A stretch of 64,000 nt of DNA from Oculina patagonica. Its lineage: Eukaryota. Location: positions 10,788,001 through 10,852,000 of the forward strand of contig NC_135763.1 in the NCBI RefSeq assembly GCF_052425735.1. The letters run 5' to 3'. Shown in pieces: positions 3,016 to 58,407 of this stretch; the first letter of the stretch is position 1, and each line of letters opens with the position of its first letter. The notes beneath the pieces were generated by a model, which had not been told where the DNA came from, ran no database searches, and saw only the letters and a program-made list of their open reading frames with translations. Made by a program: the position numbers and the translations under genes.

Positions 3016-3134
3016 AAGGGTAGGAATTTCATGGAAAATATCGACGGCAAACTGATCCTGACGGCTAAAGGGGTCAAAAATAAAAAAAGTGGATAAAAAG
3101 AAAAAAAAAAAAAAATATAAAAAAAATTTTAAAA

Positions 3135-3290: not shown

Positions 3291-4437
3291 ATTTTTTTAG
3301 GAATTTCATGGGCTGGAGTATGGAAAGGGTAGGGAAAACTGTCTTTTAGGTATTTATAAAAGGGTCTTTCAAATACTGTGAACAGACCTACGGAACACTT
3401 GATCCATCCACAGTATTCTGGTTTTTCACACACACTGAAAGGTTTAGAAAATAGATGTTGTTTCCTCACTGTAGGTATCCCGATGGGAGAAGAGTTCAGG
3501 ATCTGCGATCAGGAGAATTTTTTCATCATCATCATCATCATTTATTTGCCTCTTTAGATTCGCCTCTTTTTGGTTATAAAAAGCGCGCAAAAAATGGCCC
3601 GACCGAAGTTTATCATTAATAGCCCTTCGGTCAGTCAATAAAACGTGCCACAGTCTGTATTATTCATTTTCCGTTCTCTGATATGATTTTGTCGATGTTC
3701 CTTGTTAACTGAGGTAAATTCTGCATTGGGAAACAGTGTCCCATGGCCGACTTGAGCTTATTCCGGTTTCCGTAGCATTTCAATTATTGTAGTATTTTAA
3801 TAATGGCTGGTGCCCATTTATACACCTGGGAGGAGACAGGCACTGTGAAGATAAAGGACATAAAGTGGCCATGCAAGAACACCCTTGAGTGCAACAATGT
3901 TCGCGTTGAAATACACCTTGCGGACACTCCACTATTACGCACACTCGACTCGCTATTACGGACAAGATCCAGTTCCCCAGCAAAAGCTATACTATGAGGT
4001 TTGACTGGAAATCACTCCCGCTATTACGGAGTCTTGTTATAATACGGGCACTAAACGACGACCCGAGCCTGTGCGCTGTAACGATAGTTGACTGACTTGA
4101 CTGTACATATTTAATACACATGGGAGCGTTTTGCACGCATCCAAATAGAAATGTACAGAACCAGTACGGAACGAAAATCGACTGTGAGCAGTTTTTCTTT
4201 TGATTTAAAATCCAAAAAAACGGTACGGAACGGAACTAGTGAGACTAGCCTCGGACGCAGAGGTTATTTTGTTCGTCACGCAATCGTTGGGGAGAAAGGT
4301 TGCGTGACGAGCCAGAAAGGACAGCGGTTTTGTACAAAGTATGTCATGCAATACCATTTCTTTGTCGTGGGCGGCCATCAGCTCTTCCTTAGCTTCTGTC
4401 GCTGTTCTGTAGATTGGAATCAATCCACACTGCATCC

Positions 4438-7400
4438 ATGGGTCGACTAGCTGTATTTGCAGCGTTTTTTCTCGTCACCGTACTAGCATCGCATGTCCTT
4501 AAAACGCTGTAAGTCAGGTGTTGCTGTAAATACGTAAAAACCCCGTGTTCTGAGTTGAATTAATTATGCAGCGACTCAACTGATGCATAAATGTCAGACA
4601 ATGATTTCCTTTCATTATTCAGAATTTTGGTCGGGTTTTTCACTCATGTCGTGGATCACGCACCCGGACCATGCAGAATAATAAAAGGTAAGTTAGTTAT
4701 TATATTAGTACGTTTCGATTCTAGGAATCTGGCTTTGCGTGTTCTCAAGGACCATAAGCTACTGGGCTTTTGTCACAGTTGATTGCTTGCATGCACAGTT
4801 GCATGCACATAGAACACGGATGGCTTTTGTTTAATTGAAGGCTTTCAGTGACAACTGTTTTTGTTTCTGCACAATCACTAAAATTTTCGCAGACAGGAAA
4901 TGAAAAACTAAAAAAAACTTCGTGTTAGATAAATATAATACATCTACCCGTTATGGTAATCAAACGCCTAATCAATCTTGCGTTATCGAATTTTTGCGAC
5001 CAGCGAACAAGCACCAGCGCAGTTCGCTGGAGCAACTCTAATGTTGGTGAGGAAAGATTGCTTTGACGCTGACTAGCGATTGCGTTATATACTCCTAAAA
5101 TTCGCGGGCGCTTGTATTGTTCTCGAGCTATATTTGGCATTTAGCACGTGAACAAATGTTCCTGCTCATATGATTTTAATTAAATTAATCCATATTTTGT
5201 GCAGCGAAACATGCGTTCAATAATTCCATATTCCTTATGTGGCGTGTTCGTACGTGCCCGTGTTTTCACGATGTCAACATGTTTTCACATCGCCCATGAG
5301 TTTTCTGAGCGGTCAGTGTAAAACGAAGACTAAAATGCAGATTGAGGGTAAAATGAAGACTGCAGACCGGAAGAAAAATGCAGACAGAGGGTAAAGTAAC
5401 GAAATACGAGTCACAAAGCCTTCCGCCGACTCCAAAGTTCGAAGAAATGTATGTCAGATTACGTTTCGCATGAGCGAACACGTGAATGGACTGGCGGTTT
5501 TAAAATGTTTATATGCATATGCCGACGCAAAATGTGTTCAATTTTTTACTTTTAATACGGACTTGACCTTGTGAGACTTCAAGTCTTCGTCACCAGTAAA
5601 CTGGATGAAACTGAACGGTTAACAGCCCTTTCAGCTGTGCCCTTTCGGAAATCATTTTTTTACGCACACGAACTCATTGAAACTCATGTCATTTGTTTCA
5701 TCGCTCCTTGTGTTGCAGCCGGACGTGTCACGAAATCCTCGATCGTCTGCAGTTCGCAACGCAAGCAAGCAAGTTAACCGCTCTCTATAAACATAAAAGT
5801 GTTGTACCTTTTATTTTTTTAAATAGAGTTTTATTACGACGGTTAGCGAAGCAAAGCCATTATTTATAACTTTACTGCGGAAGCGTTTAATCTGCGCCAG
5901 CTGTTGCGGTGGAGTAATTTGATCGCTGAACGTGACCTTGCTGTGTCGGCATGGTATAAAAGAGAATTATTTTTCTAAATTATCCTTAAACCGTCCAGTT
6001 AAATGAGTTAAATCGGGTTTTTAAACGAATCAAAAAGTTAATTTGATAGCTTTTGATCAAATTATCTATTTTGTATGACATTTATCACCACTTCATTTTC
6101 ATGATAACTCATGCGAAGCGTTGTCTGGCGTACATTTCTTTGAAATTTGGAGCAGCTAGCCGGCAGGGAAAAATGGCTTTGTGACTCATATTTCGTTACT
6201 TTACCCTCGGTCTGTATTTTTCCCCTGGTCTGCAGTCTGTATTTTACACTGACCGGATTGAAAAACAATAATTCACATAAAACATAACTCATTTCTAGAA
6301 TTCACATTCCTGTAGTTTCTTTTATTTTACAACATTTTTAAAAGATAATTCTATACAAAATACACATGGTCGCACTACTTAACGTATCGTTATTACTAGT
6401 TGTATTAATTAAAACATCGGTCAGAACAAAACATGGACTGCGAACTGCGAACTGCGGACTGCGGACTGCGGACTGCGGACTACGGACTACGGACTGCGGA
6501 CTACGGACTGGGTAACAAACACGAACTGAGGTATAAAACGTGGACTAAGGCTAATAATAACCGCTATAAATGCGAACTTTTATCCAGTTATTTCAGAGAT
6601 TGCTAACAGCAACTGTAGGACTTCTTTTGAGATTCAGATCGTTCAGTTTTAGGGGTTTACCCCGTGGCATGCTTTTATGCACCCAAAAATTCAGTCACGC
6701 AAATTTCCATCCGAAAACATGCCCTCCCCTCCCCGTATATCCCCCCCCCCCCCCACAACGTATTTAAGCCCTCCCCAAAAATAAGCCAACCTAAATGCGA
6801 GGTTAGCCCAGGGCGTTTGTTTTGATAGCCCCAGCCAAAAATTAACCTTAAACCTAGAAATTAACTCAAGCCCAAACCCTAAAACTGACTCTATTTCTGG
6901 AAACTAACCGTTGTAAGCTAAAAACTAATCTTAGTATACAGTCTGCATCTGACCGAATGATAACTGAATTAAACTTTCTAAAAAAATTAATCCTGTGTCC
7001 TGTTACTATCTTTCAGTGAATGGTTCCGAGGATCTCACTCTCCTTCCTGATGGACTGGTTTTTGTGTCGTCTGTGAGTGTTTTTCATTATTCGCTGCACC
7101 TTTCAATAGCACGCGAACTCCGTACACTCAACGTTTGCGCTTTTCGCTGCCGAACACACGGGAACCTTTTTGGGGAACAAGGGAACACATGGGATTTTTT
7201 GGGGGGGAGCAAGGGAACATGGACCCCCCTTCGTTTTGGTCCTCTAGGCGCATTTTGTGTGTGTGAACGAAGGTTAAGTCACAATTTAAGCACCGTTAAG
7301 GGTTTTGAGTACAAAATGCAACAAAAGCCTTGTTAGTTCTCCTGTAATTTATGGTTATTAATTATTAGTAATTTATTATTACACCACAAACTGGTGGTCG

Positions 7401-8428
7401 ACAAGGTTAATTAGAGTTCTTGCAACGGTGCCGACTAAGGACCTTATAGACTCTTGGCCAAACACGACAAATTCAGAGTCTCCAACAATGCTATATTTAC
7501 TGCAATATTATATTGAGATTTAGAGCAGTTTTTAATTGAGTGTCGTAAAACCAAAATCAAAGTATCCACTCTGCCCAATCGCAAAGGGCGCAAACAATCC
7601 AGTGAATCAATGAAAACTCGAAGCAAATACATGTAGTCGGCACGAAGGGCGGGAAAACGAGCGAACGAGTCACGAGTGGATTTGGTTTTACTTCTGATCG
7701 GCTGAGAAAGTGGCGCGAGTTTTTTAAACCAATCACTAAGCGTAGTATAGTAGTGCAAAACCAAAGCAAGCGCGAATTACTTTCGGCACTCAAGTGAAAA
7801 CTGCTCTTTTAATTGTGAGTTTTTCTTTCTGCTTATCAAACAGGGGCTTCGCTACAAACTTGGCATGTCGTACGACCCAGTGCTTGATACACGAGACAGT
7901 AAACTGATGACATTCGACATGAACAAACCCAGTCAAGATCCAGTTGAATTAACACTGAAGAACTTTAATCGCACGGGATTCAACCCGCACGGGATCAGTG
8001 TGTATCGGGATCCATCCTCGGGTACGGTGTCGCTGTTTGTGGTGAATCACCGACCAGACGCTCAAGCCATTGAAATATTCGACTTCGAGCGAGACACGCA
8101 TTCATTAATTCATCGCCGCTCCGTGGTCGACGAGTTGATTTGGAGTCCAAATAACCTACACGCAGTGGGTAAGTAACAATGTATTTTTGATACTCCTTTT
8201 AATGCGAACGACCGACCCATTCAACCACCTTCCCACCCAACCTTCCCACAAACCCTACTCCCATCCCGCATACCCACCATGCCACCCTTGCCTAGTTCCC
8301 ATCCACTAGCTTTCCATTCTCAACCCACGTCAGTCACATACTAACTCACATCGGACCTTTACATTGCTTTAGCTAATTACAGAAAATGTAAATGTTCAGA
8401 ATGTATGTAATGCTGTGTCAATAAAGAT

Positions 8429-8465
<37 letters not shown>

Positions 8466-11400
8466 ACATCGGACCAATCGCTCGTGAAATTTTGCTGGGA
8501 CTGATTTGTTATTTCAAACTTTCAGCTGTGTAAGCACGCTCTTAAAGTCTTGCATAGCACTGCATAACCAAAGTTTTCCTGCCTGTAAAACGTGTTTCGT
8601 TGACAAATTGTTGAATAATAACAAAATCATCCTGCTCAATCTTGCGGAATATCGCTTGATTTTAGCTGACTCGGCCAACGGCCTTGTCGGCTACTTAGTA
8701 TCAGGTGATGTTCCTCGCGATTTCGCACGATAATTGTTTTAAAGTATCATGTACGCGCGCGATGGCTCAGCTAGACTTACCAAAAATAAGACGAAGGACT
8801 TTATTGAAAATCTATTACTCAGCCAATCAGATTTAAAAATGTGCATTAGTAGAACTCTACTTAAATCTGAAGTTCTCTAATGTTTTTTTTTTTCATGCCA
8901 ACAAACTGCATTTGCGGCACTGATAAAACTACCAATACCTGTACCTTTTTTTATTGATAGACCCACTGGGCTATGTTCACGCACCCCCCCCCCCTCACCC
9001 CCCTGGCTTAACCCTGGTTCTCGATGTATTGCAAAAAATGCATAATGTCACTTTCAATGGTTTTCTTTTTTCTCTTTCTCGCAGGTCCTGATAGTTTCTA
9101 CGTCACAAACGACAATTACTTCCATTATGACAGCACCCTTCTGAGGGTTCTCCACAGTTTTTTTCTACATCAATGGCACCAGGACAACATTGTGTTTTAT
9201 GACGGATTTAAGGCCATTGAAGCGATAGGGGGGATTGATACCAATGGTATTACCATGGATAAAGACGAAAGGTTGGAGTTCCTCGATTATGTAGTCATTT
9301 TTCCTCGGTTATGTAGTCAAAGACACGATGTGGAGGCAGCGTGGCCGAGTGGTTAGAGCGCCGGACTTGAAATCTGGAGGTCCCCGGTTCAAGTTCCGTT
9401 CTGACCACTATCTGGATTTGTTCTCGGTCGTCCCGAGTTCAAATCCTCGGTCATGCTTGTAAATAGCCAACTGGTCTGTCTCCTGCCAGTTGGGATTTTT
9501 AATCATGTTATGTTTATTTAATATATTATATTTGTTTCATATACACGGCCCCACAAGCTTCTATCTTTAAACACAAACCGTGTATAAATAAAGTTGCTTT
9601 AGCTTTTTACCTTAAATTGGACCTGTCTAATTCTAGCCCAGTTGGATGTTGTATACAGTTAGGCTACTTTTAGCTCGAACTCGGAAGTTACAGGATAGAG
9701 TACGCATTTTCAAGGTCGTGCAAATGGAAAAGAGTTTTTGGCAGTAGCATCCGGTTTCCATAGTAATAGGCGTGCTTGTATTTCTCAGTTCCCCCCCCCC
9801 CCCCCCCCACATTCCAGGGTTTTGTCAGATTGCCAACGCTGCCTATTTATATTTTTCGATGTTTATAAGCAATGTGAGAGCAAAATGTCAGACATAACAC
9901 AGCCAAGTCTCGAACTAGAGACCGAAAGGCTAACAGTAATGTCACCGCGTCACAATGAACGTTTAATAATAGCTTTTTTTAATAACTTTAATAACTTTTA
10001 GTTTTGCTATGTTAATTTAATTCCGTTGCTATTTATTCAGACTCTCTCACTTGGTAAGTTTAATAACTTAGGTTATTTGTCGGTTAAAGGGATTTTGGTC
10101 TAAACTATTCTGAAATTAGTGTTAGGCAACTGAACCCTAAATAAACATTTTCTATAAACATTTAAAGGAATATATAACCTGAATTTGCGGATAGAAATCA
10201 AGCTACGGCTATAAATATCCATATTTCGAAGACGCGCGGAAACAACTTGAAAACGTTAGCCTAACTTTTTCAAGTTGCAATACGTTTCCATCCGAGCCAT
10301 CTGCAACCAAAGATGCTCGTTAACAGTTATAGTGCTCTAATATAACATATTTTTGTAAAAATGGACTGTTATTGTTAGGTTTCCTGCGACACAAATATAA
10401 TATTGGCGGCTCAAATATCTGGTTAAATCCGTGACACAGTTCCTTTGAAGAGTCAGTTCAATTTTCAGCCTGTCATCACATGCACTAGTTTTACGATAGG
10501 CAATCTGTACCTTGTTAACGGAGTGTTATTTCTGTCGGGGGAGTAAGTGCCAGTTTTGGCCAATCTTCGTTGAAGCACTCGAAAAATTCCCGAATTACTT
10601 CATCCAATCAAAAACTAGCGCGAGCGCTCACGAGTTCTCCGAAAGCCGTCGCGCGTATTTCGCGCGTAAAAATACGTCATGTTGTTAAGCAGCTTCCGTG
10701 ACGAAAACCGCGGGCTCAGTCACTTCTCGGAGAAGTGATGTCGCCATTAACTGGCACTTGTTCCCTCGACTGATTTCAGGCACAGGCGAATTCACATTCC
10801 TTACTGCTCGTTTTGTCTGATTCCTCACAGGTTTGTTTTTGCATCCGCTGGTCTTAACCTTGGTGTCGCAGTCTACAGACGTCTTAAGGACAACACGTTA
10901 GAAGCGTCACAGGTTGTTCAATATATACTGTTTTTGCCGACCGTTCTAGTAACAATATATATCCTGTCTCCCGTCTCCGGGGTGGGTGGGGGTCCTCGCT
11001 GAAGTGGACTAAACGGGAGGTTCTGGTCGCCCAAAAGGGGTACCTTTTTCAGTCTGTAGCAGTATAAAAGAGTAGAGGGAAATGGCATTTAGGTATTTAA
11101 AAGGGCCTTTGAAAATAACTTACACAGACGCACCGAAGTGTAAGGGGTTTATCAACTTAAAAATTAAAAGAAACAAGTGGTCGTATCCCTTCGGTAGGTA
11201 TTTGGAAAGGATACGATTTTCTATCGAAGGTTTATGAAAGGGTATATAACCATTTCTGTCAAAAAAGTTCTTGACATGGTACAGTTTTTGCCCTCTGGAG
11301 AAGCTCCCGTGTAAAACATTTTTTAGGAGAGATCTATTTTTTTCTCAAGCTGAAAGTGTGATTAGTTTAGCTGGAGAAATTTCTAGTAGAACATGCTTTT

Positions 11401-35890: not shown

Positions 35891-38800
35891 ATGGATTTTG
35901 AACGAAACCCTCGTCTTCTGAGCTGTCTTAGTGATCACAACTACTGGATCACTTGTGGTAAGATCAGTCACGTTTAAGCGTAATACCTTGGAGCTACACT
36001 GTAGTGCGCTTATCGAACTCAAGTTTTTCTGGATGACACTCACCCGAATTCCCCCCCCCCCCCCCCCCTGTATAAATGTTTAGCCGCAGGAGCGGGAGGC
36101 CGCGCATAGGAGGGGCATTTAAACCCGACGATTCCAATCAATGAGTATCAATAATCAATAAAATCAATAGTTATCAATAATAATCAATTGATTGATATTG
36201 ATTGATATTGATAATCAATTAAAATCAAAGCCGCAATGTTGAGTGATTTTCGATTTTCATTGATTTTCATTGATTGCCATTGATTGTCATTGATTTCTAT
36301 TAACTTAAATCGGTTTTATTTTTATTTATTTTTTTTAATAAATCTCACGGACGAGGACAGAGACCCAATTTTATTTCTGATATCTGATTACTGAAGTAAA
36401 GTACCACAGAAACAACAGTAATAATTAACAGTAACTTTTTATTATATTCATTTCTTTGCTGTATCATCCTATTGACATGTATTGACAACTATTTCAAACA
36501 TGCATTTCCTGCAATTTAGTCGGTGTGTTCGTTTATATGACATTAACAATAGCGTTACTCGAACTAGACTTCAATATTGTTTCGTTTTCTCAATTCTAGA
36601 TAGATCAGTGCAATCAAACAGAAACAATTTAACAATTTAATAAAATTTAACAATTTAATAAAATCGACTACACAAGAAATAGAAATCTTCACAGACATGG
36701 CGCCGATGATGTGTTTCAGTGTGTTTGCAAACGCGCCAGGAAACGTGTTAAATCAAGCAAATGCCTTTGTAGCCGGGTTTTTACTGTTGCACAATCAGCT
36801 ATTGATTATCAATTAAAATCAATGAAAATCAATGAAATTAAGACGGCTCGGTGAGTGATTTTTGATTTTTATTGATTATGTAAATTAATCAATATCAATC
36901 AATTGATTACTATTGATTAATATTGATTATATTGATTGAAATCAATGATTGATTTTCATTGATTGAAATCGTCGGGATTTAAACTTAGCTGAGATTTCCT
37001 GTTCAAATGCCCACCACAGGGCATTTATGGATGATCAAAACAGTCACTCAACTTCTATAAAATCTTGTGTTAGAAAGTCCACTAAAATATTCAAAAGTCC
37101 CCACTGTCAAATCCCCTGCCTATGCCTGGCCTCCCTCCCTTCTCGACTCGCCCTCTCCCCTCTCCCCTCTCCCTGCAGCTTAACATTGATGCATAACACA
37201 GGTATATATCTGTTGGACTAGATAAGACTTAACATGCCTATCTTGTCCAACAGCTGGCTGCTATATTTGTGTACTGAGAAGCACACTGGGTTGGACCTTG
37301 GGGTTTCTTGGAGAAGGGATGAACCTCCCTATGGACTCATTGTGAGGGACAGGGTCATATCATATACATCGTCAGCACTTTACCTCAGTTCCATTCCCAG
37401 GGTATTATTCCTAGGGAAATAAATTTTTTATTCGTTTTGTTGAGTATGGTCAAATGTTAAGCATGCTAACATTTTAGCCTGCAAATACAGCCATCTCTGC
37501 AGTATTTGCAAGCTAGCGTAGTGGTAGAAACAATGAGAGGTGGCTGTATTCACGGGCTATAACCTTTCGTACACAAAAATCGTCCACTTCTTGATGTGTT
37601 ACATGCACAAATGACTAGCTATTTAAAGGACTTTGTTGCATGTTTTTATTATTTTTTTTTAAATTTATTCTTTTATTTTTATTTTCAACTTTCTTCTTTA
37701 GATCCCCCAAGAGCCAATGGTTCAGTATCAGAGTCAATGCAGCCTTTTGATGATGTCATCCTTGATTTCATGACAGAGCAAGACATTCCTGGTGCAAGTG
37801 TTGCTTTGAGTAGAGATGGAATTCTGGTATATTGTCAAGGTAGAAATCACATAGTACGTAAACCTGCGAAATTCACTGTCTTTGGCAACTAATTTCACTT
37901 CATGTAAATTTGCTGCTATGGTCCTATTTTCCCAGAGGAGGAGTTAGGAACAAAGTTACTTTCAAAAATATTATTTACAAGGCTAAAAAGTTAAAAACCC
38001 TGATGATGACAACAAGTCCAAACGTTCTGTTTTTTTTAAATTTTATAACTTTTTAGCCTTGTAAATAATATTTTTACCTCTTTAGCGAACATTATAACAA
38101 CAAAAGTTACTTTTGCTGCATACTTTCCCTGAAACTAATAACATTCTTGTCAAAATTGAATTACCATCACAATTGATCAGCAGCTGCCTACTTACAGTTT
38201 TTCCATCTACATGCAAAGTTATCAAGACTCCCTGGACCTCATAGGAACCTCTACCCTTTGCCTTTCGCCTCAATCAAGTACCATACTACAAGGTTCTGTG
38301 ACATGGCATGAAATGTTATAGAGAGAACTGCCTGTAGTCTAGCCTTATACAATTCACGATATAGCCATTCGGTCCCCTTTTCTTTATACAGGCTATGGCA
38401 GTGCTGGTGTGGGAAGGAAAGTCCAACCTGACCTGTTGTTCAGGATTGCCAGCATTAGCAAGACAATTACTGCCGTGGGTATCATGCGACTGGTTGAAGA
38501 AAGAAAACTTTCCTTGGAAGATAGAGTGTTTGGACCACAAGGTATATATGTGCACATTCTCAACACTCCAAGTTAAGACCATTTTAGTCGCCATGGCAAC
38601 TAAAATTTTGGAGCTGGTGATTAAATTGGAGCCTGGCGACTAAAATTGAGAAGAAAGATTGAAAGCGTTTGCTTAATTTTGCAACTAAAATTTTTCACTG
38701 GTGACCAAACTTGAGCAGTCCGGTGGCCAAGTGACCACTGGGGAAAAAAATAAACTTGGAGGGTTGATTCTGATCAACTCTTTAAGCCCTGGGTCCAGTT

Positions 38801-41800
38801 GCTTATGAACCAAGATTAGATTAATCCAGGATTGAAAGTACAAGCCAAAATTTTCAAAAGCAAGTATAAAGCATTAGTTGAATTTCTGGAGATGTGCCAA
38901 GGTTTAAACCAAAAAACCTTTACATCGGAGGGGGATATAGATATTTTCTGGAACTACACAAATATATAGGTAATGATTTCTGTTTATCTCTCTAATTTTG
39001 CCCAAGAGAAGTTACCGTAAACCTTTAAACACATGCAAATTAAATCTTTCTGTTTTCTTCATAGATGTTTTACAGTACTTGTCAGGAGAATTTCTTAAAT
39101 TCCCTTATTCTTGTCAAGTTTTGTTCATGCTGTGTTGCTTGAATTTAGAAAATTACAGTCAACTTTCTCTCAACACACAGCTCTATAAGGACAGACACCT
39201 GGTGTTGATCCGGTTCCTGCCGTTTTTCAGTTTTTTACTGTAACATAAGTCCCTATATGATGGACACCTCTCTAAGATGGATATCCGCTGACCAGTATCA
39301 CATGACCATATTGCGGGCTCACATATAGAACTCATCGAGGTCGAGTGTTTTTTTTGAAGTTTACTGCTGACCAAATAATGGTTTACATTGGATCGCGGGC
39401 TCAGGTGCTATATTTTTTTCTGTTATTGGTCAGTAAATTGGGAGCTCCGCTTTTAGGCTTGGCTAAATCTATTTAATAGTTTATAGCTCAATATCTGTCT
39501 GTTTCCTTGTTATTGAATGCAGAAAGAAAATGAAACAACATAATTGCTGTCAGCATTGCACCCATTTTGCAGACAAATAATATATATTCTTTGTATATCT
39601 TAAAAAGAAATTTCACAGAGAAATTTATTCACAGTTACATTTAAATTTTAAAACATTAGTCATTTTTGTCAAACATAAAATTAAAGTGAAAAGAAGTCAA
39701 TTTTTTTGAGAAAAAAAGGAAAACAATTATCTGAGATACATGCCTGTTGTATCATGAAATGCCTTTTTTAAGATTGAAGTGTACTATGTATACAATCAGA
39801 AACCCATAAGGGTTGAAACGTGTAACGCGCGCGCACAGCGTTTGAATATTCATTTTGCTAAGTACCATATTTGGAAACACGAACAATTTGTATGCGAATG
39901 CTTTATACACGTAATGAAACACGCAACATATTTTTTGGTTTTGCGGTAAGTTACTTGAATTTCGACCTAAAGGCCGTAAATTTCTTACAGAAACTAAAGA
40001 AATTCATTAAGTGTATCAAAGCGAAGTTATCCAGACTACCTCATGAAGATGAAAAAGGAGAATTTAACCAAATTTAACTTTATTAAACCAAGCTTGTTCA
40101 AAAACAAGATTACGCCATCGAGCGCAAGCTAGCGCGCGCTGTGAATTTAATCCAAATATGGTACTTAGTGATTTTCGTGATTTTCCAAATATGGTACTTA
40201 GTGTAAACGAATGTGCAAACGCTTTGTACAATGCGAATCATAGGGAGTTACACGTTTCAACCCTTATGGGTTTCTGATACAATACATGTATGAAGTTCTA
40301 CTTCATTTATGTTCAAGGAATTTTAAATGAATACAGCCCAACAGAAAATGGGGATAGCCGCATAGTTAACATCACAGTGAAACATCTACTACATCACTCT
40401 GCTGGCTGGGACAGAGACAGGGCTGGGGACCCTGTGTTCTGGAAGGTGGGCAAGCACATGAATGTTGCCGAACCTGTGGTCCCTAGTGTACTGATACAGT
40501 ATATGATGGGAAAGAAACTTCAGTTTGCTCCAGGTGAGTATTTTACAGTGCTTATTACAGTGAAACCCATTAAACTGACTTTGCGAGTGCTGGCAATCCG
40601 AATGTTGTCTTATGGATGCACTTTGCAACAATGTACAACACACATAGGCCATTTCCAAGATTCCTTTTAAACGAGTTCTGGTATACAAGCTTTCATATGG
40701 AAATTAGTTTTTCTTGTACGTCAATTGTCTTGCAAATAAGACTCATTTCATATCTAAACGTTGTGCGTCAGGACTGGTTTTGAAGAAAAGAAAAAAGCAG
40801 AGTTAAAGAGACAAATCGAAAATGGCTTTATGCACACAGTGGTTCAGTCATTCGACTTGGTCATGTGCCCAAATGCAAGATTTCTGGGTGACCAACAATT
40901 AATCCCATTTCTTTAGAACTTTCCCTGTCAGAGGAGAAAATTAGAGAAAAAAAGGACGTGGATTGTTGTGTTTAGAATAGAAATCGGATAGAAAGAAAGC
41001 AGGGAAATGACGTGGTAGTTGTGCCACATCATTGGCCAAAAAACGAGGAAAAACTATGAATGGACGAAAAACTAAGGATAGAACCGTGCACGTGTATTTG
41101 TTTAACTTTGATTGGTTACTCTGGCTGAGTTTTTGTGAAAATTAAGTTCCTTCTTGTTGTTTCACAGGGAAACGACACGCCTATTCCAACTTAGGTTATA
41201 CAGTTTTGGGACAAGTGATCGAAAGAACGACTGGACAAGGGTATGAAGAGTTTATGACGAGTCTGTTTAAGTGTGTGGGAATAACACAAATGAAAATTGG
41301 GAGAACTCGGAAGAAGGATCTGGGTGATGAAGAGGTAGGAACTACTACATGTACATACATACATACATAAACTTTATTTAAGTGTCAGGGTATTTAAATA
41401 GCTAATTGGGGACACTAAAATAAATATACAAATATAAAATATAAAAATACTGCCATAAGGATCTATCTCTTTCCCTACTTCCCTTGAAGTCCCCCCTCCT
41501 TCTGCCAGGGACACGATCTAGCCACCGAAACACCTAAAAATTATACTAGTAGATTTAGAGATTGAATCTAAACATATTTACGGGTCACTGGACATCTTCT
41601 TTTAGGTGGAATATTTTCACAATCGTCACCCGACGATGGTGAAGTCAATATTTCCCGACGGGGGTAGAGTGCCTCCACAGTATGGGAGGTGGACTATGGA
41701 AGAGGCTGATGCGCATGGCGGGTGGATAGCGACAGCTGCTGAGCTGTTGAGGTTTCTTCTCGCGTTGGAACACGGTGCGAATGGTTGCAGAATGATCTCA

Positions 41801-42874
41801 GCTGAAACATTTAAAACAATGCTTGAAAAGCCGTCCTTTGAAAAAGATACTGAAGAATGGTACGGGTTTGGTCTCGACATCCGGGACAATGGTAGTACTT
41901 GGGGTCACAGTGGACAAATGGAGGGTACCTCGGGTGTTCTCACGCGCCACTGTGGGGGGTACGCTTGGGCGCTGTTGTTCAATTCGTGGGCTAAAGACTT
42001 GGACCTGGACGGCTTGGTGAAGTATGCGTTGAGTCGCACTGCGCATGTTACAATACATCCTATTTCAGATAATATCATCCCCGATACCATAAGGACAGGA
42101 GACAATCGTCAGGTCATTAAGGTTATGGTACCAACCAGCGCCTTCTGGTCATTGTATGATGATTTAAAACAACAAGGATTTGATTTAACTTGGCTAAACG
42201 CTTATAAAGTTGCAGATGTTGTATATTTCAACACGATTTTCATTCAAAGCAGTAGCTTAAACTCGGCTTCAACTGTTTATATTGGATTAACAGCTGACTC
42301 GTGTCGCGATCGACTTGACAGTCTTGTTGGTCTGCGACCTTTCCATATCGAGACCTATGTCAAAAACAACGAGTTTCTTTATGCTGTGCTCGTAACTCCT
42401 GCAAATGGAGTATCGTGGACGTTAAATTTTGATCTCACTGTCGCGCAGCATAGAAAAAACATGCCAGCAATGTTTAAAAGTGATTACAACCTAACTGTGC
42501 AATGTCTAACCGAGTTCAAAGGTCGATTACATGTTACAACTCTGTACGAAAAAGTCCCGAATGGCGAATGCATTGCAGAGTTTGACCTCAAACCGGATTA
42601 TTACCAGTTTGAATTTCACAAGCAAGCTAAACAAGGTGTGACGTTAACTTACGTCAGGGCCTATCACGTGAAAGGCAAGCCTCGGTTTAGTGTCATCTGG
42701 ACCAATCAGATTGCGGGCTTAAGCGGAACGAGGCATAACGTGTCTAAATATGGGTTTTTGTTCGAGCTGGAAGAGACAGCAAAGAAGAATTTCTATGCGC
42801 AGTGTATAAGTTGTTATATGAATGAAGACGTTCTCAATTTTGTTGTATCGTGGAATAAAGAAATTAAGAAATGA
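35891..42874 (+). CDS. Serine beta-lactamase-fold hydrolase (AmpC/PBP-like) with C-terminal polyglycine-hydrolase-like (BTRD1) repeats, ~668 aa
   Basis: Coding exons 35891-35957, 37702-37839, 38392-38541, 40318-40533, 41168-41334, 41606-42874 (2007 nt, phases consistent). Motifs IPGASVA, FRIASISK (SxxK), LLHHSAG, FAPG..AYSNLGY (YxN), AHGGWIATAAELLRF, WYGFG, WGHSG. C-terminal ~50-aa repeats such as YDDLKQQGFDLTWLNAY..YFNTIF and QAKQGVTLTYVRAY..PRFSVIW. The first exon and start are less certain. Confidence 0.88.
36124..36976. mobile_element. MITE with long AATCAAT-rich inverted arms
   Basis: CCCGACGATT(C/T)CAATCAATGA TIRs; ATTTAAA duplicated at 36117-36123 and 36977-36983. Confidence 0.85.
37964..38075 (+). 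mobile_element. Penelope-type pLTR remnant with degenerate hammerhead inside a 30-bp inverted repeat
   Basis: CTGATGA-TGAC-aacaa-GTC-cAAAC at 38000-38023 (G of GAAAC mutated); arms 37964-37993 and 38047-38075. Confidence 0.6.
39797..40276. mobile_element. MITE with 29-bp perfect TIRs and 7-bp TSD
   Basis: CAGAAACCCATAAGGGTTGAAACGTGTAAC termini; ATACAAT at 39790-39796 and 40277-40283; ends 41 bp before an exon. Confidence 0.9.
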
Positions 42875-43001
42875 ACTGGAAAGTCTTGTTTACAATGTTT
42901 TGTTTGGTGACTGTGGAATGGCAGACGCCTTTTTCAGTCATACAAAACTTATTCCACATGTCGCAGTATATTTGCAGGAAAAAGAACCTACTTACAGTGC
43001 A

Positions 43002-45071: not shown

Positions 45072-46837
45072 CTACGACCTGTCAGGGTCGTCCTTCTTAA
45101 ATACAAAATCTACAGGTGGGACGGGCGTGGCGGGTCCTCTTATGTACCTATGCCTCTTTCGAGACTCGTCCTGGTACATCCATGATTTGTCTGAGAACAG
45201 GTTCATGTTAGGACAAGTATGAATATTGATCACACCTTCCTTTCTCTCGCTTGGCCTCTCAAAAGAGATGTTGGCATTAGCTCCGGCTTTAAAATGGCCC
45301 GCTTTTGAGGTTACCCCGTCTAAAGCTTGTTTCTTCACACGCAGTGCGGAGGGCGGTAAAGCAGGAAGAGGTTGCTTAACAAACGACTGAACTTTCGTCT
45401 TAAGTTCGTCAGTTTCCGACCTGGCGCGATTTTGAAGTTGCTGAACGGTCGATACCTTTCGGGTGCCTACGTCGCCAGGTTCGGATCGCGCTCGTAATCT
45501 TTCGATGACAACGCTGATCGATTCGAAGTCGCCTTCTTCGCTGTTCGGCGGAGTTGGAATGTCTGATTCGTTCGACTTCCGTTTTATGACTTGATTGTTT
45601 TCAGAACATGCTATTATTGATGACGGAAGAGCAACAATCTCGCTGCTTTTTTGTTCCGTGTTTGATGAAGTGTCACATTTGTTCCTTGTTATTTTGTCAG
45701 CTGCCTCGACATCAAAATCTTGATTTTGTACTGCAAACTCACTGCCTGCTGAGTTTACTTTTGTGCTAACATCGATCAGAGCTGAAATCTTTTGATCCGC
45801 AGCACTCAGCGACCCTGCTCCGTTTGCCGTCTCGTGGCATCTTGAGTAATGCATCAGTGATTTCTCGGTCAAAACAGGAAACCTAGTTTCTCTAGACCCT
45901 GTGCTTTGTTTCTTAACTCCACTGATTTTTCTACTTTCCTTTCTCTTCAAATTTTTCTCTAATATTTGATATTTTAAATGATCAAGTTTCTCCCTTTGTT
46001 CTGCAGACATTCGCACAGAATCTTCTACTTCACTATCTGAAAAACTTCGACCCCTGGTTAACTCCTGATCAGAAACTTTCTTCCACGATAAATTTCCTTG
46101 CCCCGGATCAGGAAGACTTATTTTATGTGTATGAGAGTCTTTATCAAAGTGTACCAGACGCTTGCTATGTATAGTCACGCTTTCTCCATTATTCAGCCGG
46201 TTACCTTTGGCCCCTTTTCGATGTGTCCAACTGGGGGACGACGATCTGTATTCTTCATGCGCATTAACGTTCTCGCCAGACATTGCTGGAAACGTCAGCG
46301 TCTCTTCGACCCTGTCGTTGCCGTAGATGCTGTGTTCAGGTTTGGGTGAAGTAGCACTCTTTTTGTTACACATCTTCCCTTGATTATGCTCATTCCTCCA
46401 CGCGACTGAAACCGTCTGATCGTGAGGCAATGCTGGTCTCGAGTTTCCCGTGCTTCTGTCATCAGGCTTTCGTTCCAGCTCACTAGTGCTCTTCCTTCGA
46501 GTGTTTGTAAACTGTGGCGTTAACATAGCTTTAAGTAATGGCTGCCCTTCACTTTTGCGTCGATTCCCTTCTCTTAAGCCTGACGCCGAAGCGTCCTGAG
46601 GCCATGTAACGGTCTTTCGATCACGAAGCTCTCGGCTTCCGCGTTTCGAGTCCCTTGACGCAGCACGCTTTCTCGTAAATCTGCTTTGTGTCCAAGCTCG
46701 TTGTCAGCAAGACGTCTCTTCCAATCTCCAATCTTGAAAACGTCAATATTATCGGTAGTGTTTTCCTTACCATTTAGCGATGAACTTGGCTCAACAAATC
46801 CATTAATCCGATTTTCATCTAGAGGCAAGACGGACAT
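45072..46837 (-). CDS. Uncharacterised Ser/Lys/Arg-rich, probably disordered protein; apparently split by a frameshift near its 5' end
   Basis: Frame open 46703-45072 (first ATG 46526, 484 aa); an upstream ATG at 46837 opens an overlapping frame ending at 46574. C-terminus SWMYQD..RHRYIRGPATPVPPVDFVF looks like a conserved short motif. Confidence 0.7.
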
Positions 46838-56187: not shown

Positions 56188-58407
56188 TTAAGTCGTTCTG
56201 TTGGCGGTTCGTTTGTCGCTTCTCTTTTCGTCGTGAATAAGTCGTTTGTAAGGTGCCGGTAGTTGTTGACATCTGTTGATAGGCTTCTGTTCTAAGTTTG
56301 TGTACCAGCTTTCCAGAGTCAGTCGTTGAAAATAGTTAGTACTGTAGGTTAAGCATTCAGCAGAGTCCCAGTCGATTTTGTGTTTAGTAAGTCGGTGGTG
56401 TTCAGAAATGTGATTGTTGACATCACCATTTCTCGTCGCTCGTTTGTGTTCAGTCAGTCTCGTGGTCAAGTTTCTACCGGTCTCTCCGATGTAGGAGGCC
56501 TGGCAGTCGGAGCATTTGATCTTATAAATCGCTCCCTGTCTGTTGTTAGGTTCGTCCCTGTCTTTAACGTTGGTCAGTAAATGTCGTAACGTTGTTATAG
56601 GTTTGTGAGCTACACGGATATTGTAGGGTTGTAGGATCCGCGCAATAGTCTCAGAAGTGCCCTTGATGTAGGGTAAAGTCGCTGTAGTAACAGATGTCAG
56701 ATTTCTGTCAGTTTCAGTAGTTCTGTGAGTGTTGCGTCTAATAAAGTCAGTATTGTAGTTGTTCTTGTGGAAAACGCGGTCAAGGTATTTGTTTTCGTCA
56801 GATAAACTGTCTGGTGTGTCACAAACTAGTTGCGCTCGTCTCGTCAAAGTCTTGATAGTCGTAGCTTTGTGGGAAGTCGGGTTGTAGGATGTTTCGTCCA
56901 GTAATCTGTCGGTATGCGTCGGTTTTCTGTACACTGTAGTTCGTATTTTGTTGATGTCGCGGCTTACCAGACAGTCAAGAAAAGGAAGTTTTCCGTTTTC
57001 TTCGATCTCCCTGGTAAACTGAATGTCGGCGTTCTGTTCGTTTAGGTGTTTGTGAAAGTCGTCGATTTCGTCTTTGTGTACGGTGGTAAAAGTATCGTCA
57101 ACGTAGCGTAACCAGAGCGGTATCGTTTGTCGGCAAGTTGCAAGGGCGCGTTCCTCGATGTTTTGCATCACAATTTCTGCGACAACAACGGAAACCGGCG
57201 ACCCCATGGCTGTTCCGTGCAACTGCTTGTAGTGTTTTCCGTTGTACTGGAAGTAAGTCGATGTAAGGCAGAGGTTCAGTAAGTCCATAATGTCTTCAGT
57301 CGGTAGCGGTAATGTAACAGTAGATTGTTGAATAGCGGTCTCGGTGCACTGTAGAGCCAATTGAAGTGGAATACTGGTGAACAGTGATTTCACATCAAAA
57401 GACACAAGTTTGTAGTCGTCAGGTATCTGTACAGTCTTGATGGCGTCAATAAAGTTCTCAGTAGATTGTAGTTTACGTCTGGATTCGTCTGTAAGAGGTT
57501 GCAGTATAGTCGTCAGGTATTTAGACAGTTGGTACGTAGGGGACCCACAGAACGAGACTATGGGTCGCATCGGTATACCCGGCTTGTGCAGTTTCGGTAG
57601 TCCGTAAAGTTTCGGTGGTTGCGGTACTGAGCACCGCAGTCGGTAGTAACGTTGATTGTCAAAAGCGTCGGTCTTTTTAAGCGTAAGTAGTTTGTTGTTC
57701 AGTTTACGTTGTAGTGCAGGCGTCGGGTCACGTTTAAGTACTTCGTAGATTTGTTTGTCGTTAACAAGTGCGTCCATTTTGTCATAGTAATCAGTCTTGT
57801 CCATAACAACAGTAACGCGTCCTTTGTCGGCTGGTAGTATAACAATGTTGTCGTCGGTTTTCAGTCGTTTCAGTGCTTGTTGTTCGTCTTTAGTCAAGTT
57901 GCTGTTAGGTATGGAGGCTGACTGTATCGTGGAAGCAATTCTGCTTCTGATGTTATCCTTGGCTGGTTCCGATAAATCTCGCTGACGAGACATAACCGCC
58001 TCAACACTAGATACAATAGTCTCGGTCGGTATACGTTTAGGTGTCACTGAGTGTTTCAGTCCGTATGAGAGTACCTGCGTCTCAGTTTTGTCTAAGGGAC
58101 GGGAAGAAATATTCCTGACCCAGTTTTCGTCAGATTTGTGTCGCTTTTTGTCTTTGTTGTGTTGAAGTCGTGTCAGTTTTTGTTTGTGTTCAGTGCGAAC
58201 ACGGTCTGTCGTTTTGTTGGCACGTCTGTCGGCAATAGTCGTAATAGTGTCAAGTAAGTTAGTCGGTATCAGTTGTTTAAGTTTGTCAAGTTGTTGTTGT
58301 AGTTTGTTGTTGTAGTATTTGAGTCTTCTGTGACAGTCGTTTATCCGCGCTTTGACCAGTCGTCTGCAGGTGGATTTGACGATCTGGATGGCCTCTTGTG
58401 TGTTCAA
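56188..58407 (-). CDS. Penelope reverse transcriptase + GIY-YIG endonuclease (N-terminally truncated, otherwise open for 739 codons)
   Basis: PADKG, LYGLPKLHK, SFDVKSLFT, GTAMGSP, RYVDD, LPFLD, AIYKIKC..C..SYIGETGR..RLTEH. The listed start is TTG, not a true initiator. Confidence 0.95.
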   Translation of the reverse strand: MNTQEAIQIVKSTCRRLVKARINDCHRRLKYYNNKLQQQLDKLKQLIPTNLLDTITTIADRRANKTTDRVRTEHKQKLTRLQHNKDKKRHKSDENWVRNISSRPLDKTETQVLSYGLKHSVTPKRIPTETIVSSVEAVMSRQRDLSEPAKDNIRSRIASTIQSASIPNSNLTKDEQQALKRLKTDDNIVILPADKGRVTVVMDKTDYYDKMDALVNDKQIYEVLKRDPTPALQRKLNNKLLTLKKTDAFDNQRYYRLRCSVPQPPKLYGLPKLHKPGIPMRPIVSFCGSPTYQLSKYLTTILQPLTDESRRKLQSTENFIDAIKTVQIPDDYKLVSFDVKSLFTSIPLQLALQCTETAIQQSTVTLPLPTEDIMDLLNLCLTSTYFQYNGKHYKQLHGTAMGSPVSVVVAEIVMQNIEERALATCRQTIPLWLRYVDDTFTTVHKDEIDDFHKHLNEQNADIQFTREIEENGKLPFLDCLVSRDINKIRTTVYRKPTHTDRLLDETSYNPTSHKATTIKTLTRRAQLVCDTPDSLSDENKYLDRVFHKNNYNTDFIRRNTHRTTETDRNLTSVTTATLPYIKGTSETIARILQPYNIRVAHKPITTLRHLLTNVKDRDEPNNRQGAIYKIKCSDCQASYIGETGRNLTTRLTEHKRATRNGDVNNHISEHHRLTKHKIDWDSAECLTYSTNYFQRLTLESWYTNLEQKPINRCQQLPAPYKRLIHDEKRSDKRTANRTT

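What the first reader, a model, noticed from the sequence alone, without database searches (positions are those of the whole stretch)
35891..42874. Intron-containing animal gene with a bacterial-type serine hydrolase fused to polyglycine-hydrolase-like repeats
Seen: a complete SxxK (SISK), YxN (YSN), HxG (HSG) set, followed by about five ~50-aa repeats; all the repeats lie in one 1269-bp exon and no signal peptide is evident. Established: beta-lactamase fold plus BTRD1 repeats is the architecture of fungal polyglycine hydrolases (secreted proteases that clip plant chitinases, with repeats N-terminal) and of uncharacterised bacterial proteins; this is not the LACTB architecture. Inference: a domesticated, possibly horizontally acquired, intracellular hydrolase with reversed domain order and unknown substrate (Gly-rich peptides, D-amino-acid peptides or peptidoglycan fragments, or lactams).
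Basis: partly seen in the sequence, partly recalled or inferred. Interest (0 to 1): 0.75.

Follow-up and report, generated by a model that had tools for sequence, protein, structure and literature searches.

The report
Coral serine hydrolase with polyglycine-hydrolase-like barrel
This is a real, spliced and transcribed stony-coral gene for an uncharacterised penicillin-binding-type serine hydrolase fused to the five-repeat barrel otherwise solved only in fungal polyglycine hydrolases; the same gene, with the same introns, occurs in molluscs and brachiopods, so it is an old animal gene rather than a recent bacterial import.

Summary
Window 35891-42874 (+) holds a six-exon gene of Oculina patagonica (LOC144656716, 668 aa). 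A spliced RNA contig confirms the junctions of exons 2-6. Residues 38-376 are a PF00144 beta-lactamase/S12 domain (E 7e-59). Its SISK, YSN and HSG motifs are invariant from corals to a bacterium. Residues 415-664 form five E-H-E-E repeats (BTRD1, E 2e-16). The only significant PDB match of their AlphaFold model is the N-domain of fungal polyglycine hydrolase 7TPU (TM 0.75).

- **Not coral-specific.** Orthologues occur across Scleractinia, four mollusc classes, brachiopods and annelids.
- **Shared introns.** All five coral introns have the same position and phase in scallop and Lingula.
- **One animal clade.** Its nearest relatives are bacterial (37-43% identity), not fungal enzymes, LACTB or LACTBL1.
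- **Origin.** A bacterial origin is plausible but would be ancient.
- **Domain order.** The "reversed" order already exists in bacteria.
- **Location.** Corals and most orthologues have no signal peptide.

The substrate is unknown. The likeliest function is a cytosolic acyl-enzyme peptidase or amidase of the D-stereospecific S12 type. I rate it a new member of a known kind, of moderate interest.

The parts
35891..35957 (+). Exon 1: start codon and aa 1-22 (MDFERNPRLLSCLSDHNYWITC), ending in phase 1. No signal peptide.
   Evidence: Sequence read. It matches P0001 residues 1-23 and is conserved in another coral transcript, P0019. The DHNY motif is shared with bivalves. The RNA lay-out did not cover this exon directly.
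37702..37839 (+). Exon 2 (138 nt, phase 1 to 1): start of the beta-lactamase-fold domain.
   Evidence: Spliced contigs X2 record 16 and X6 record 20 lie on 37701-37837 and continue directly at 38390.
38392..38541 (+). Exon 3 (150 nt): carries the catalytic SxxK motif, S89-I-S-K92, at 38451-38462.
   Evidence: S89 and K92 invariant; spliced contig.
40318..40533 (+). Exon 4 (216 nt): helical part of the hydrolase domain.
   Evidence: A joint from 40530 to 41165 with GT..AG ends is seen in three runs (table 5).
41168..41334 (+). Exon 5 (167 nt): carries the YxN motif, Y196-S-N198, at 41182-41190.
   Evidence: (Y196 and N198 invariant).
41606..42874 (+). Exon 6 (1269 nt, stop codon 42872-42874 included): end of the hydrolase domain with H347-S-G349 at 41906-41914, a linker, and the whole repeat domain.
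   Evidence: One contig lies on 41604-42900 in X2.
42110..42859 (+). C-terminal five-repeat alpha/beta barrel (aa 415-664, five E-H-E-E units; BTRD1 / polyglycine-hydrolase N-domain fold).
   Evidence: Pfam PF17660. AlphaFold secondary structure. Foldseek gives 7tpu_A at E 5.5e-6, TM 0.75 and rmsd 3.5 over 258 columns as the only significant PDB hit.

Best explanation
Window 35891-42874 is an expressed six-exon gene of the stony coral Oculina patagonica. It encodes a 668-aa, probably cytosolic, two-domain enzyme.

The N-terminal domain (about aa 33-390) is a serine hydrolase of the penicillin-binding / class-C beta-lactamase fold (MEROPS S12 type). By analogy with solved S12 enzymes, it should work through an acyl-enzyme. 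Ser89 of SISK would be the nucleophile, Lys92 and Tyr196 (of YSN) the general base/acid pair, and the His347-Ser-Gly349 strand would line the active site.

The C-terminal domain (aa 415-664) is a barrel of five E-H-E-E repeats. It has the same fold as the N-domain of fungal polyglycine hydrolases, where that domain is thought to position the substrate. Here it most likely serves as a substrate- or partner-binding platform.

The gene belongs to one animal family found in Scleractinia, molluscs, brachiopods and annelids, with shared introns. It was therefore already an intron-bearing animal gene before these lineages separated, unless DNA moved between animals. The family's nearest relatives are bacterial 'CubicO-group' S12 hydrolases, some with the same domain order, so an ancient bacterial origin is likely.

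Shown: the gene model, its splicing, the domains, the folds, motif conservation, the intron positions and the family's distribution.

Inferred: the catalytic mechanism, the cytosolic location, the role of the barrel, and the substrate class. The likeliest substrates are peptides or amides with D-amino-acid or glycine residues, such as peptidoglycan-derived or endogenous D-amino-acid peptides. Beta-lactams are less likely.
For: Gene and expression:
- The hand-built model equals P0001.
- Spliced contigs join exons 2-6.
- The gene lies on a 38.5-Mb scaffold among retroelements and is single-copy.

Enzyme:
- PF00144 scores E 7e-59.
- S89, K92, Y196, N198, H347 and G349 are invariant across corals, brachiopod, molluscs, annelid and a bacterium.
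- Orthologues from different coral lineages are 70-77% identical.
- Best solved relatives by sequence: Pab87 2qmi (E 2e-22), Flp, 7tpu (E 6.5e-17), alkaline D-peptidase, LACTB.
- Best solved relatives by fold: Pab87, R61 DD-peptidase, FmtA-like, D-stereospecific hydrolase dHy1, alkaline D-peptidase.

Barrel:
- PF17660 hit.
- Five EHEE repeats at pLDDT 93-94.
- 7tpu is the unique PDB hit, TM 0.75. The same EHEE x5 description is given for Fvan-cmp in PMC9912923.

Evolution:
- Orthologue names.
- Identical intron positions and phases in Pecten and Lingula, with three also seen in an unidentified eukaryote.
- Holding animals as one clade gives a better tree than the free search, AU 0.81.
- The animal clade together with P0099 is split from the bacteria at 100/98 and 98/96.
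- Bacterial relatives are 37-43% identical across many phyla.
- The same domain order occurs in bacteria.

Location:
- No signal peptide in corals, cephalopods, bivalves or Lingula.
Against: - No biochemical data exist for any member of the animal family. I found no paper on it.
- No NCBIfam equivalog reaches its cut-off; the best is AmpH at 60 bits against 266. The sequence therefore does not fix the substrate.
- S12 enzymes also include esterases such as EstB, EstG and IS11, which appear among the fold hits.
- Polyglycine hydrolases themselves lack beta-lactamase activity (PMC9912923), so fold does not predict chemistry.
- The Owenia orthologue starts with a signal-peptide-like sequence, and the Pocillopora gene models have a different, Arg-rich N-terminus. 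Location may therefore vary or depend on isoform; I did not see isoform X1 of Oculina.
- Absence from other cnidarians, ecdysozoans and deuterostomes is inferred only from the top of two searches, not from direct genome searches.
- The direction of any bacterium-animal transfer is not shown.
Confidence: 0.7

Rival explanations
1. The coral gene was acquired laterally from a lophotrochozoan (mollusc-line) genome as intron-bearing DNA in the ancestor of Scleractinia. It was not inherited from the cnidarian-bilaterian ancestor.
For: - No other cnidarian appears among the best hits of the exhaustive search or the profile search.
- The introns are identical.
- With all taxa, the careful full-length tree puts corals as sister to molluscs, inside Lophotrochozoa (96/96*). 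Holding Lophotrochozoa together costs 21.5 lnL, AU p 0.053.
Against: - After the three long-branch rows (Owenia, Dimorphilus, Pinctada) are removed, coral+mollusc support falls to 69/44. Holding Lophotrochozoa together then costs only 1.6 lnL, AU p 0.41.
- On the hydrolase-domain tree the held tree is even better than the free one.
- Coral-mollusc identity is only 37-38% overall, which fits very old divergence.
- Absence in other cnidarians was not tested on their genomes.
Confidence: 0.1
2. The enzyme is mainly a carboxylesterase or lipid/small-molecule hydrolase (EstB/EstG-like) rather than a peptidase. The barrel would bind a non-peptide ligand.
For: - Esterases EstB, IS11, EH7, EstG and EstCE1 are among the best fold hits.
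- NCBI names the Babylonia orthologue 'esterase EstB-like'.
- The barrel fold is also fused to glycoside hydrolases and other unrelated domains, so it is not peptide-specific.
Against: - The best sequence and fold matches are peptidases or amidases: Pab87, R61 DD-peptidase, alkaline D-peptidase, D-stereospecific hydrolases and polyglycine hydrolase.
- From my own knowledge, the H-x-G third motif is typical of the R61/D-aminopeptidase branch.
- The only characterised enzyme with both domains is a protease (PMC9912923).
Confidence: 0.15
3. The stretch is bacterial contamination or a very recent bacterial insertion in the coral assembly.
For: The domain family is overwhelmingly bacterial.
Against: - There are five GT-AG introns, spliced in RNA contigs.
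- The gene lies on a 38.5-Mb scaffold between eukaryotic retroelements.
- Its G+C content is like its surroundings.
- Orthologues occur in at least four other coral lineages and in lophotrochozoans, with the same introns.
Confidence: 0.01
4. The protein is a catalytically dead binding protein (pseudoenzyme) that keeps only the fold.
For: Animal beta-lactamase-domain proteins such as gigasin-6 have been discussed as possibly inactivated forms (PMC5854119). Polyglycine hydrolases lack beta-lactamase activity.
Against: All six residues of the three catalytic motifs are invariant across corals, lophotrochozoans and a bacterium, in an alignment whose mean column identity is only 40%.
Confidence: 0.04

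Closest known systems
Fungal polyglycine hydrolases / chitinase-modifying proteins (Fvan-cmp, PDB 7TPU; Es-cmp, Bz-cmp)
   Same: They share the same two building blocks: an S12 beta-lactamase-fold catalytic domain with SxxK and a YxN-type tyrosine, and a barrel of five E-H-E-E structural repeats. The coral barrel model matches 7tpu_A at TM 0.75, its only significant PDB hit. The catalytic domains match at E 6.5e-17.
   Different: - The domain order is reversed: the barrel is N-terminal in the fungal enzymes (PMC9912923).
- The fungal enzymes are secreted and glycosylated, whereas the coral protein has no signal peptide.
- Identity in the barrel is only 12%.
- Bacterial hydrolases are closer to the coral catalytic domain (37-43%) than the fungal enzyme is.
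- The fungal substrate, the polyglycine linker of a plant chitinase, has no evident counterpart in a coral.
Bacterial 'CubicO group peptidase' / serine hydrolase proteins with BTRD1 repeats (for example Nitrospirales MAG MEE8125962.1 = P0214/P0054, and AlphaFold DB clusters A0A7W0YN08, B2T8L5, A0A2N3T5B2, B4SDT8)
   Same: They have the same domain order (hydrolase then barrel) and a similar size (551-673 aa). The catalytic domain is 33-43% identical, and PF00144 plus PF17660 both score.
   Different: - They have no introns.
- P0054 has only about three repeats.
- In the trees the bacterial sequences form their own clade, apart from the animal clade.
- They are uncharacterised as well.
Pab87 (Pyrococcus abyssi, PDB 2QMI) and other S12 D-stereospecific peptidases (Streptomyces R61 DD-peptidase, Bacillus alkaline D-peptidase, D-amino-acid amidase)
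   Same: These are the best solved relatives of the catalytic domain by sequence (2qmi, E 2.3e-22) and by fold. They share the SxxK / YxN / HxG motif set.
   Different: The C-terminal domain of Pab87 is a different fold, and its octameric cage is not shown here. The others are single-domain secreted bacterial enzymes. Identity is about 20-22%.
Animal beta-lactamase-domain families: LACTB (mitochondrial) and LACTBL1 ('putative beta-lactamase-like 1')
   Same: They are animal genes with a PF00144 domain. The Oculina genome has six intronless LACTBL1-like ORFs and one multi-exon PF00144 locus besides this gene.
   Different: They have no BTRD1 barrel. The LACTBL1-like ORF is only 24% identical over 167 aa. 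LACTB chains are weaker hits (E 1e-14) than the archaeal, bacterial and fungal S12 enzymes.

Membership tests
Beta-lactamase / S12 serine hydrolase superfamily (PF00144) | Profile match above Pfam's gathering score over the whole domain | tested here: met
   200 bits against a cut-off of 27; aa 38-376 cover profile positions 1-313 of 329.
Beta-lactamase / S12 serine hydrolase superfamily (PF00144) | Catalytic motifs SxxK, YxN and K/H-x-G present and conserved | tested here: met
   S89ISK92, Y196SN198 and H347SG349 are all invariant in alignment A1.
Beta-lactamase / S12 serine hydrolase superfamily (PF00144) | Hydrolytic activity through an acyl-serine intermediate | not testable with these tools
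   Needs enzyme assays with a Ser89Ala control.
BTRD1 / polyglycine-hydrolase-like structural repeat (PF17660) | Profile match above the gathering score | tested here: met
   60 bits against a cut-off of 23, with two stretches scoring on their own. The other three repeats are seen only in the structure model.
BTRD1 / polyglycine-hydrolase-like structural repeat (PF17660) | Five E-H-E-E units closing into an alpha/beta barrel, as in the Fvan-cmp N-domain | tested here: met
   The secondary structure of two models shows five units at pLDDT 93-94. Foldseek gives 7tpu_A at TM 0.75 and E 5.5e-6. This rests on predicted structures only.
Polyglycine hydrolase (fungal chitinase-modifying protein) | Barrel N-terminal, catalytic domain C-terminal | tested here: not met
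   The order is catalytic domain then barrel.
Polyglycine hydrolase (fungal chitinase-modifying protein) | Secreted (signal peptide) | tested here: not met
   The N-terminus MDFERNPRLLSCLSDHNYWITC has no hydrophobic core, and it is conserved in other corals. No predictor was run; I judged this by eye.
Polyglycine hydrolase (fungal chitinase-modifying protein) | Cleaves Gly-Gly bonds in polyglycine linkers | not testable with these tools
   Needs a biochemical assay.
Polyglycine hydrolase (fungal chitinase-modifying protein) | Closest relatives are the fungal enzymes | tested here: not met
   Bacterial hydrolases score far higher (about 230-310 bits) than 7tpu (64 bits). No fungal sequence was available for the trees.
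LACTB | Orthology to mitochondrial LACTB (single PF00144 domain, no barrel) | tested here: not met
   LACTB chains score E 1e-14, below Pab87, Flp and 7tpu. This protein has an extra barrel domain. A separate multi-exon PF00144 locus exists on contig C3; I did not check whether it is LACTB.
Class C beta-lactamase / AmpH / PBP4B / D-aminopeptidase equivalogs (NCBIfam) | Score above the curated equivalog cut-off | tested here: not met
   The best is AmpH at 59.9 bits against 266; class C scores 51.5 against 415.
Pab87-type CubicO self-compartmentalising peptidase | Pab87-type C-terminal domain and octameric cage | tested here: inconclusive
   The catalytic domain is the best sequence and fold match. 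The C-terminal domain matches only 7tpu in the PDB. The oligomeric state could not be tested because two copies exceed the size limit of the complex tool.
Gigasin-6 (bivalve shell-matrix protein with a beta-lactamase domain) | Sequence orthology to gigasin-6 | not tested
RefSeq calls the bivalve orthologues of this family 'uncharacterized', not gigasin-6-like, which suggests they are distinct.

The most novel reading that the evidence does not exclude
The family is an ancient bacterial acquisition that survives only in Scleractinia and Lophotrochozoa. Its presence in stony corals alone among cnidarians would reflect transfer of an intron-bearing gene between animal phyla (mollusc line to coral ancestor) rather than many independent losses. 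A softer form of this reading: retention tracks a shared biology of these marine, largely calcifying lineages, such as handling of glycine-rich matrix proteins or of D-amino-acid peptides.
Probability: 0.1. Interest if true: 0.8.

Novelty: new member of a known kind. Interest (0 to 1): 0.45.

Why it matters
The only characterised enzyme that combines these two domains is a fungal virulence protease. This report shows that a conserved and expressed animal family of unknown function has the same two parts, with catalytic residues intact and apparently acting inside the cell. The family is present in reef-building corals and in commercially important molluscs.

The family is a clean target for finding a new animal peptidase or amidase activity. 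Candidate substrates are D-amino-acid peptides, peptidoglycan fragments and glycine-rich proteins. All three bear on host-microbe interaction, and glycine-rich proteins also on biomineralisation.

The identical introns across phyla, combined with a very patchy distribution, make it a useful test case for telling ancient bacterial acquisition followed by loss from later transfer between animals.

Tried and rejected
- **Genome-wide PF17660 search.** It found nothing, not even this gene, and the controls did not ring. The result is uninformative.
- **Foldseek with the whole 668-aa model.** The hydrolase domain dominated and 7tpu was not in the top 50. The barrel had to be folded and searched on its own.
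- **Corals nested inside Lophotrochozoa (AU p 0.053).** I treat this as a long-branch effect. Without Owenia, Dimorphilus and Pinctada, support drops to 69/44 and the AU p rises to 0.41. The hydrolase-domain tree does not reject lophotrochozoan monophyly either.
- **Alternative signal-bearing first exon.** I searched the window with the Pocillopora and Lingula N-termini and found only chance-level matches.
- **Gene neighbourhood of the bacterial same-order homologue (L007).** It holds a transposase and an FGE-sulfatase-like gene, which give no functional hint.
- **NCBIfam naming.** No equivalog reaches its cut-off.
- **Literature.** I found no paper on an animal beta-lactamase-plus-BTRD1 family. 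Shell-proteome papers mention other beta-lactamase-domain proteins, gigasin-6 and 'protein flp', whose relation to this family I could not test.
- **P0099, the sister of the animal clade.** It comes from a 3.2-kb metagenome contig. Its ORF runs off the 5' end, and a 900-nt AT-richer tail follows it. I could not decide whether it is bacterial or eukaryotic.
- **Homo-oligomer prediction.** Not attempted, because two copies exceed the 1000-residue limit.
- **Contamination or recent insertion.** Rejected (see rival explanations).


Full report
**1. The observation**

Reading the sequence gives six exons on the + strand: 35891-35957, 37702-37839, 38392-38541, 40318-40533, 41168-41334 and 41606-42874. 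All introns are GT-AG. Introns 1-4 are phase 1, each splitting a glycine codon. Intron 5 is phase 0.

The 2007-nt coding sequence translates to 668 aa. It is identical to P0001, which NCBI names 'uncharacterized protein LOC144656716 isoform X2 [Oculina patagonica]' on a 38.5-Mb scaffold. A six-frame search of the genome finds only these six exons, so the gene is single-copy.

Pfam gives PF00144 Beta-lactamase at aa 38-376 (E 6.6e-59) and PF17660 BTRD1 (E 2.1e-16), both far above their curated cut-offs. The last exon is 1269 bp and contains all the repeats.

**2. Expression**

Assembled contigs of public runs were laid on 37650-42900.
- One 2151-nt contig (run X2, record 16) and one 1922-nt contig (run X6, record 20) lie on 37701-37837, 38390-38537, 40314-40530, 41165-41332 and 41604 onward, without a break in the contig. 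That is a spliced mRNA with exactly the predicted junctions of exons 2-6.
- A third run shows the junction of exons 4 and 5.
- A DNA run (X15) covers introns and exons alike.
- Exon 1 lay outside the stretch laid. It rests on the annotation, on the 160 nt that the X2 contig extends upstream of exon 2, and on conservation of the N-terminal peptide in another coral transcript (P0019).

**3. Structure**

AlphaFold2 with an 87-sequence alignment gives pLDDT 93 and pTM 0.91. The model has a beta-lactamase-fold domain (about aa 33-390), a short low-confidence linker (about aa 391-410), and five E-H-E-E units at 415-460, 469-511, 517-562, 568-612 and 618-664.

The whole model matches S12 enzymes best: Pab87 (2qmi), R61 DD-peptidase, an FmtA-like protein, the D-stereospecific hydrolase dHy1, alkaline D-peptidase, EstB and LACTB.

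The C-terminal domain was then folded alone (pLDDT 93.9). It has one significant match in the PDB: 7tpu_A, the Fusarium vanettenii polyglycine hydrolase (E 5.5e-6, TM 0.75, rmsd 3.5 Å over 258 columns, 12% identity). The next hit has E 0.08.

The paper on 7TPU describes its N-domain as five quasi-identical EHEE repeats of 44 residues forming a barrel. It notes that similar predicted folds occur across all kingdoms, mostly in bacteria, and that the enzyme has no beta-lactamase activity (PMC9912923).

In AlphaFold DB clusters the barrel occurs C-terminal to serine hydrolases of 647-673 aa and N-terminal to others. It also occurs next to C39 peptidase, TIR, GH26, GH16 and kinase domains. It is therefore a widely reused module.

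**4. Relatives**

Word-based and profile searches find orthologues of 664-690 aa in other stony corals, including Pocillopora and Montipora, at 70-77% identity.

An exhaustive HMMER search of 1.84 billion representatives ranks colinear two-domain proteins of 30-41% identity next. Their sources name them as:
- Lingula anatina (brachiopod);
- Haliotis, Babylonia and Aplysia (gastropods);
- Argonauta (cephalopod);
- Pecten, Sinanodonta, Mactra and Pinctada (bivalves);
- Owenia and Dimorphilus (annelids).

The profile search adds Octopus, a chiton (Liolophura) and more bivalves and gastropods. No other cnidarian, ecdysozoan or deuterostome appears among these top hits. This is an inference from ranking, not a search of their genomes.

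Below the animals come thousands of bacterial and metagenomic proteins. In GTDB genomes the hydrolase domain is 37-43% identical in Acidobacteriota, Planctomycetota, Verrucomicrobiota, Chloroflexota and others.

Both domain orders occur among these relatives. Hydrolase-then-barrel is found in a Nitrospirales MAG (P0054, three BTRD1 stretches) and in P0099. Barrel-then-hydrolase is found in eight others.

**5. Introns**

I mapped the annotated proteins of Pecten maximus and Lingula anatina onto their genomic loci.
- All five coral introns fall in the same alignment column (the first within one column) and the same phase in Pecten, which has one extra intron.
- Lingula has the same five junctions (…FWG|TESP, VYTQ|GYGQ, FGPK|GILS, QFTP|GTKH, FEDE|VEYY) and the same single large last exon. 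I read these from the exon borders; the automated solver did not complete for Lingula.
- An unidentified eukaryote (ENA contig of 2.3 Mb, 34% G+C) shows exon borders at the last three junctions.

Independent bacterial acquisitions would not produce this pattern. The animal genes descend from one intron-bearing ancestor.

**6. Trees**

*Hydrolase domain, 100 rows.* Corals form a clade (100). The bacterial rows form one clade (88). The free tree leaves brachiopod and annelids unresolved at the base. Holding all animals together gives a better likelihood than the free search (AU 0.81).

*Full length, 36 rows, careful search.* Bacteria (100/98) separate from P0099 plus animals (100/98). In that tree corals are sister to molluscs (96/96), inside Lophotrochozoa. 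Holding Lophotrochozoa together costs 21.5 lnL (AU p 0.053).

*Control for long branches.* Owenia, Dimorphilus and Pinctada have very long branches. Without them, the coral+mollusc node drops to 69/44 and the cost drops to 1.6 lnL (AU p 0.41).

I conclude that the data are compatible with vertical descent from the cnidarian-bilaterian ancestor followed by many losses. Transfer between animals remains a low-probability alternative. The direction bacterium to animal is inferred only from the great bacterial diversity set against a narrow animal distribution.

**7. What it is not**

- **Contamination.** It has introns, spliced RNA and a retroelement-rich eukaryotic setting.
- **LACTB or LACTBL1.** The genome has six intronless ORFs named 'putative beta-lactamase-like 1' in other corals, only 24% identical over 167 aa, plus a separate multi-exon PF00144 locus.
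- **A named bacterial equivalog.** None reaches its cut-off.
- **A polyglycine hydrolase in the family sense.** The domain order is reversed, there is no signal peptide, and the fungal enzyme is a more distant relative than the bacterial ones.

**8. How it most likely works**

*Shown.* The protein has an intact, conserved S12 catalytic set: S89, K92, Y196, N198, H347 and G349 are invariant in an alignment whose mean column identity is 40%. It also has a confident two-domain fold.

*Inferred from established S12 enzymology.* Ser89 attacks the scissile carbonyl to give an acyl-enzyme that water then resolves. Lys92 and Tyr196 shuttle protons.

*Substrate.* The nearest solved enzymes act on D-amino-acid-containing peptides or amides, or on Gly-Gly bonds. 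From my own knowledge, the H-x-G third motif is that of the R61 DD-peptidase branch. I therefore favour a peptidase or amidase for D-amino-acid or glycine-containing substrates over a beta-lactamase or an esterase, but with low confidence.

*Location.* The lack of a signal peptide in corals, cephalopods, bivalves and Lingula points to an intracellular site. The Owenia protein starts with a signal-like sequence, and the Pocillopora models have an Arg-rich alternative N-terminus, so this may vary.

*Barrel.* By analogy with the suggestion made for polyglycine hydrolases, it is probably a substrate- or partner-binding platform.

**9. Verdict**

The interpretation needs correcting on origin: this is an old, shared animal gene, not a coral acquisition. 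It also needs correcting on the novelty of the domain order, which bacteria already have.

The animal family is conserved, expressed and entirely uncharacterised, and I found no literature on it. I rate it a new member of a known kind, of moderate interest. Its patchy phyletic distribution with identical introns is its most intriguing feature.

Noticed in passing
Genome contigs outside the window: G000:C10:12134967-12146744 (three ORFs), C10:3440106-3442896 (two ORFs), C8:32704340-32705290; loci L087-L092: Six apparently intronless ORFs of 568-637 aa with a full PF00144 domain. Their coral homologues are named 'putative beta-lactamase-like 1' (LACTBL1). They are only 24% identical over 167 aa to the gene studied, and they sit in tandem or head-to-head clusters.
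   Followed up: partly
Genome contig C3:29191585-29194922 (L093, L097): A multi-exon PF00144 locus, possibly the LACTB orthologue. I did not examine it.
   Followed up: no
window 38530-40290 (intron 3 of the gene): Summed contig depth here is hundreds to thousands of times that of the exons in every run laid (up to about 128,000 in the DNA run). There are many joints and loose ends. The intron is filled with high-copy repeats or transposon fragments.
   Followed up: no
window 36120-36300 and 36840-36970 (intron 1): Two blocks of short 'tcaat/attga'-rich repeats (caat-tgat-tgatattgat…) flank about 550 bp. They look like terminal repeat arrays of a small inserted element.
   Followed up: no
window 56191-58407 (-): A 739-aa ORF with reverse transcriptase (E 3e-7) and a weak GIY-YIG match (E 7e-4), the domain pair of Penelope-like retroelements.
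   Followed up: partly
window 219-1538 (-): A 440-aa ORF with a strong reverse-transcriptase domain (E 2e-40), i.e. another retroelement.
   Followed up: partly
window 45075-46526 (-): An ATG-initiated ORF of 484 aa with no Pfam match, just downstream of the gene on the opposite strand. Its nature is unknown.
   Followed up: partly
P0023 (Montipora foliosa isoform X2) compared with P0024: This annotated isoform lacks exactly the 46 residues of exon 2. Exons 2-4 are all phase 1-1 and multiples of three, so the skip is in frame, and it would remove the start of the hydrolase domain.
   Followed up: no
P0014 / P0017 (Pocillopora), residues 1-47: These gene models start with a different, Arg/Ser-rich N-terminus (MLAIPRGQRIRRSS…) in place of the MDF…DHNYWI peptide. 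It could be a targeting presequence or a mis-annotated first exon. No counterpart was found in the Oculina window.
   Followed up: partly
L101 (ENA ERZ24900295, contig ctg6745l, 2.3 Mb, 34% G+C), positions 2-9332: An unidentified eukaryotic genome carries a homologue about 30% identical to the coral protein, and about equally distant from Lingula and molluscs. Exon borders sit at the coral intron positions 118/119, 190/191 and 246/247. A second pair (P0164/P0301) is 42% identical to Lingula. The family is therefore wider than the named species show.
   Followed up: partly
P0037, P0227, P0228, P0043, P0234-P0239 (gastropod orthologues): Gastropod members carry large insertions (about 65 to 430 aa) inside the hydrolase domain at one site (profile positions about 272-277). 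Heterobranch members also have insertions within the repeat domain.
   Followed up: no
L100 (JGI metagenome 3300036111, 3168-bp contig): P0099 is the closest non-animal sequence with the same domain order. It has a 59.5% G+C ORF that runs off the 5' end of the contig, followed by 900 nt of 40% G+C with no convincing genes. That is odd for a bacterial contig, so it may be a eukaryotic transcript.
   Followed up: partly
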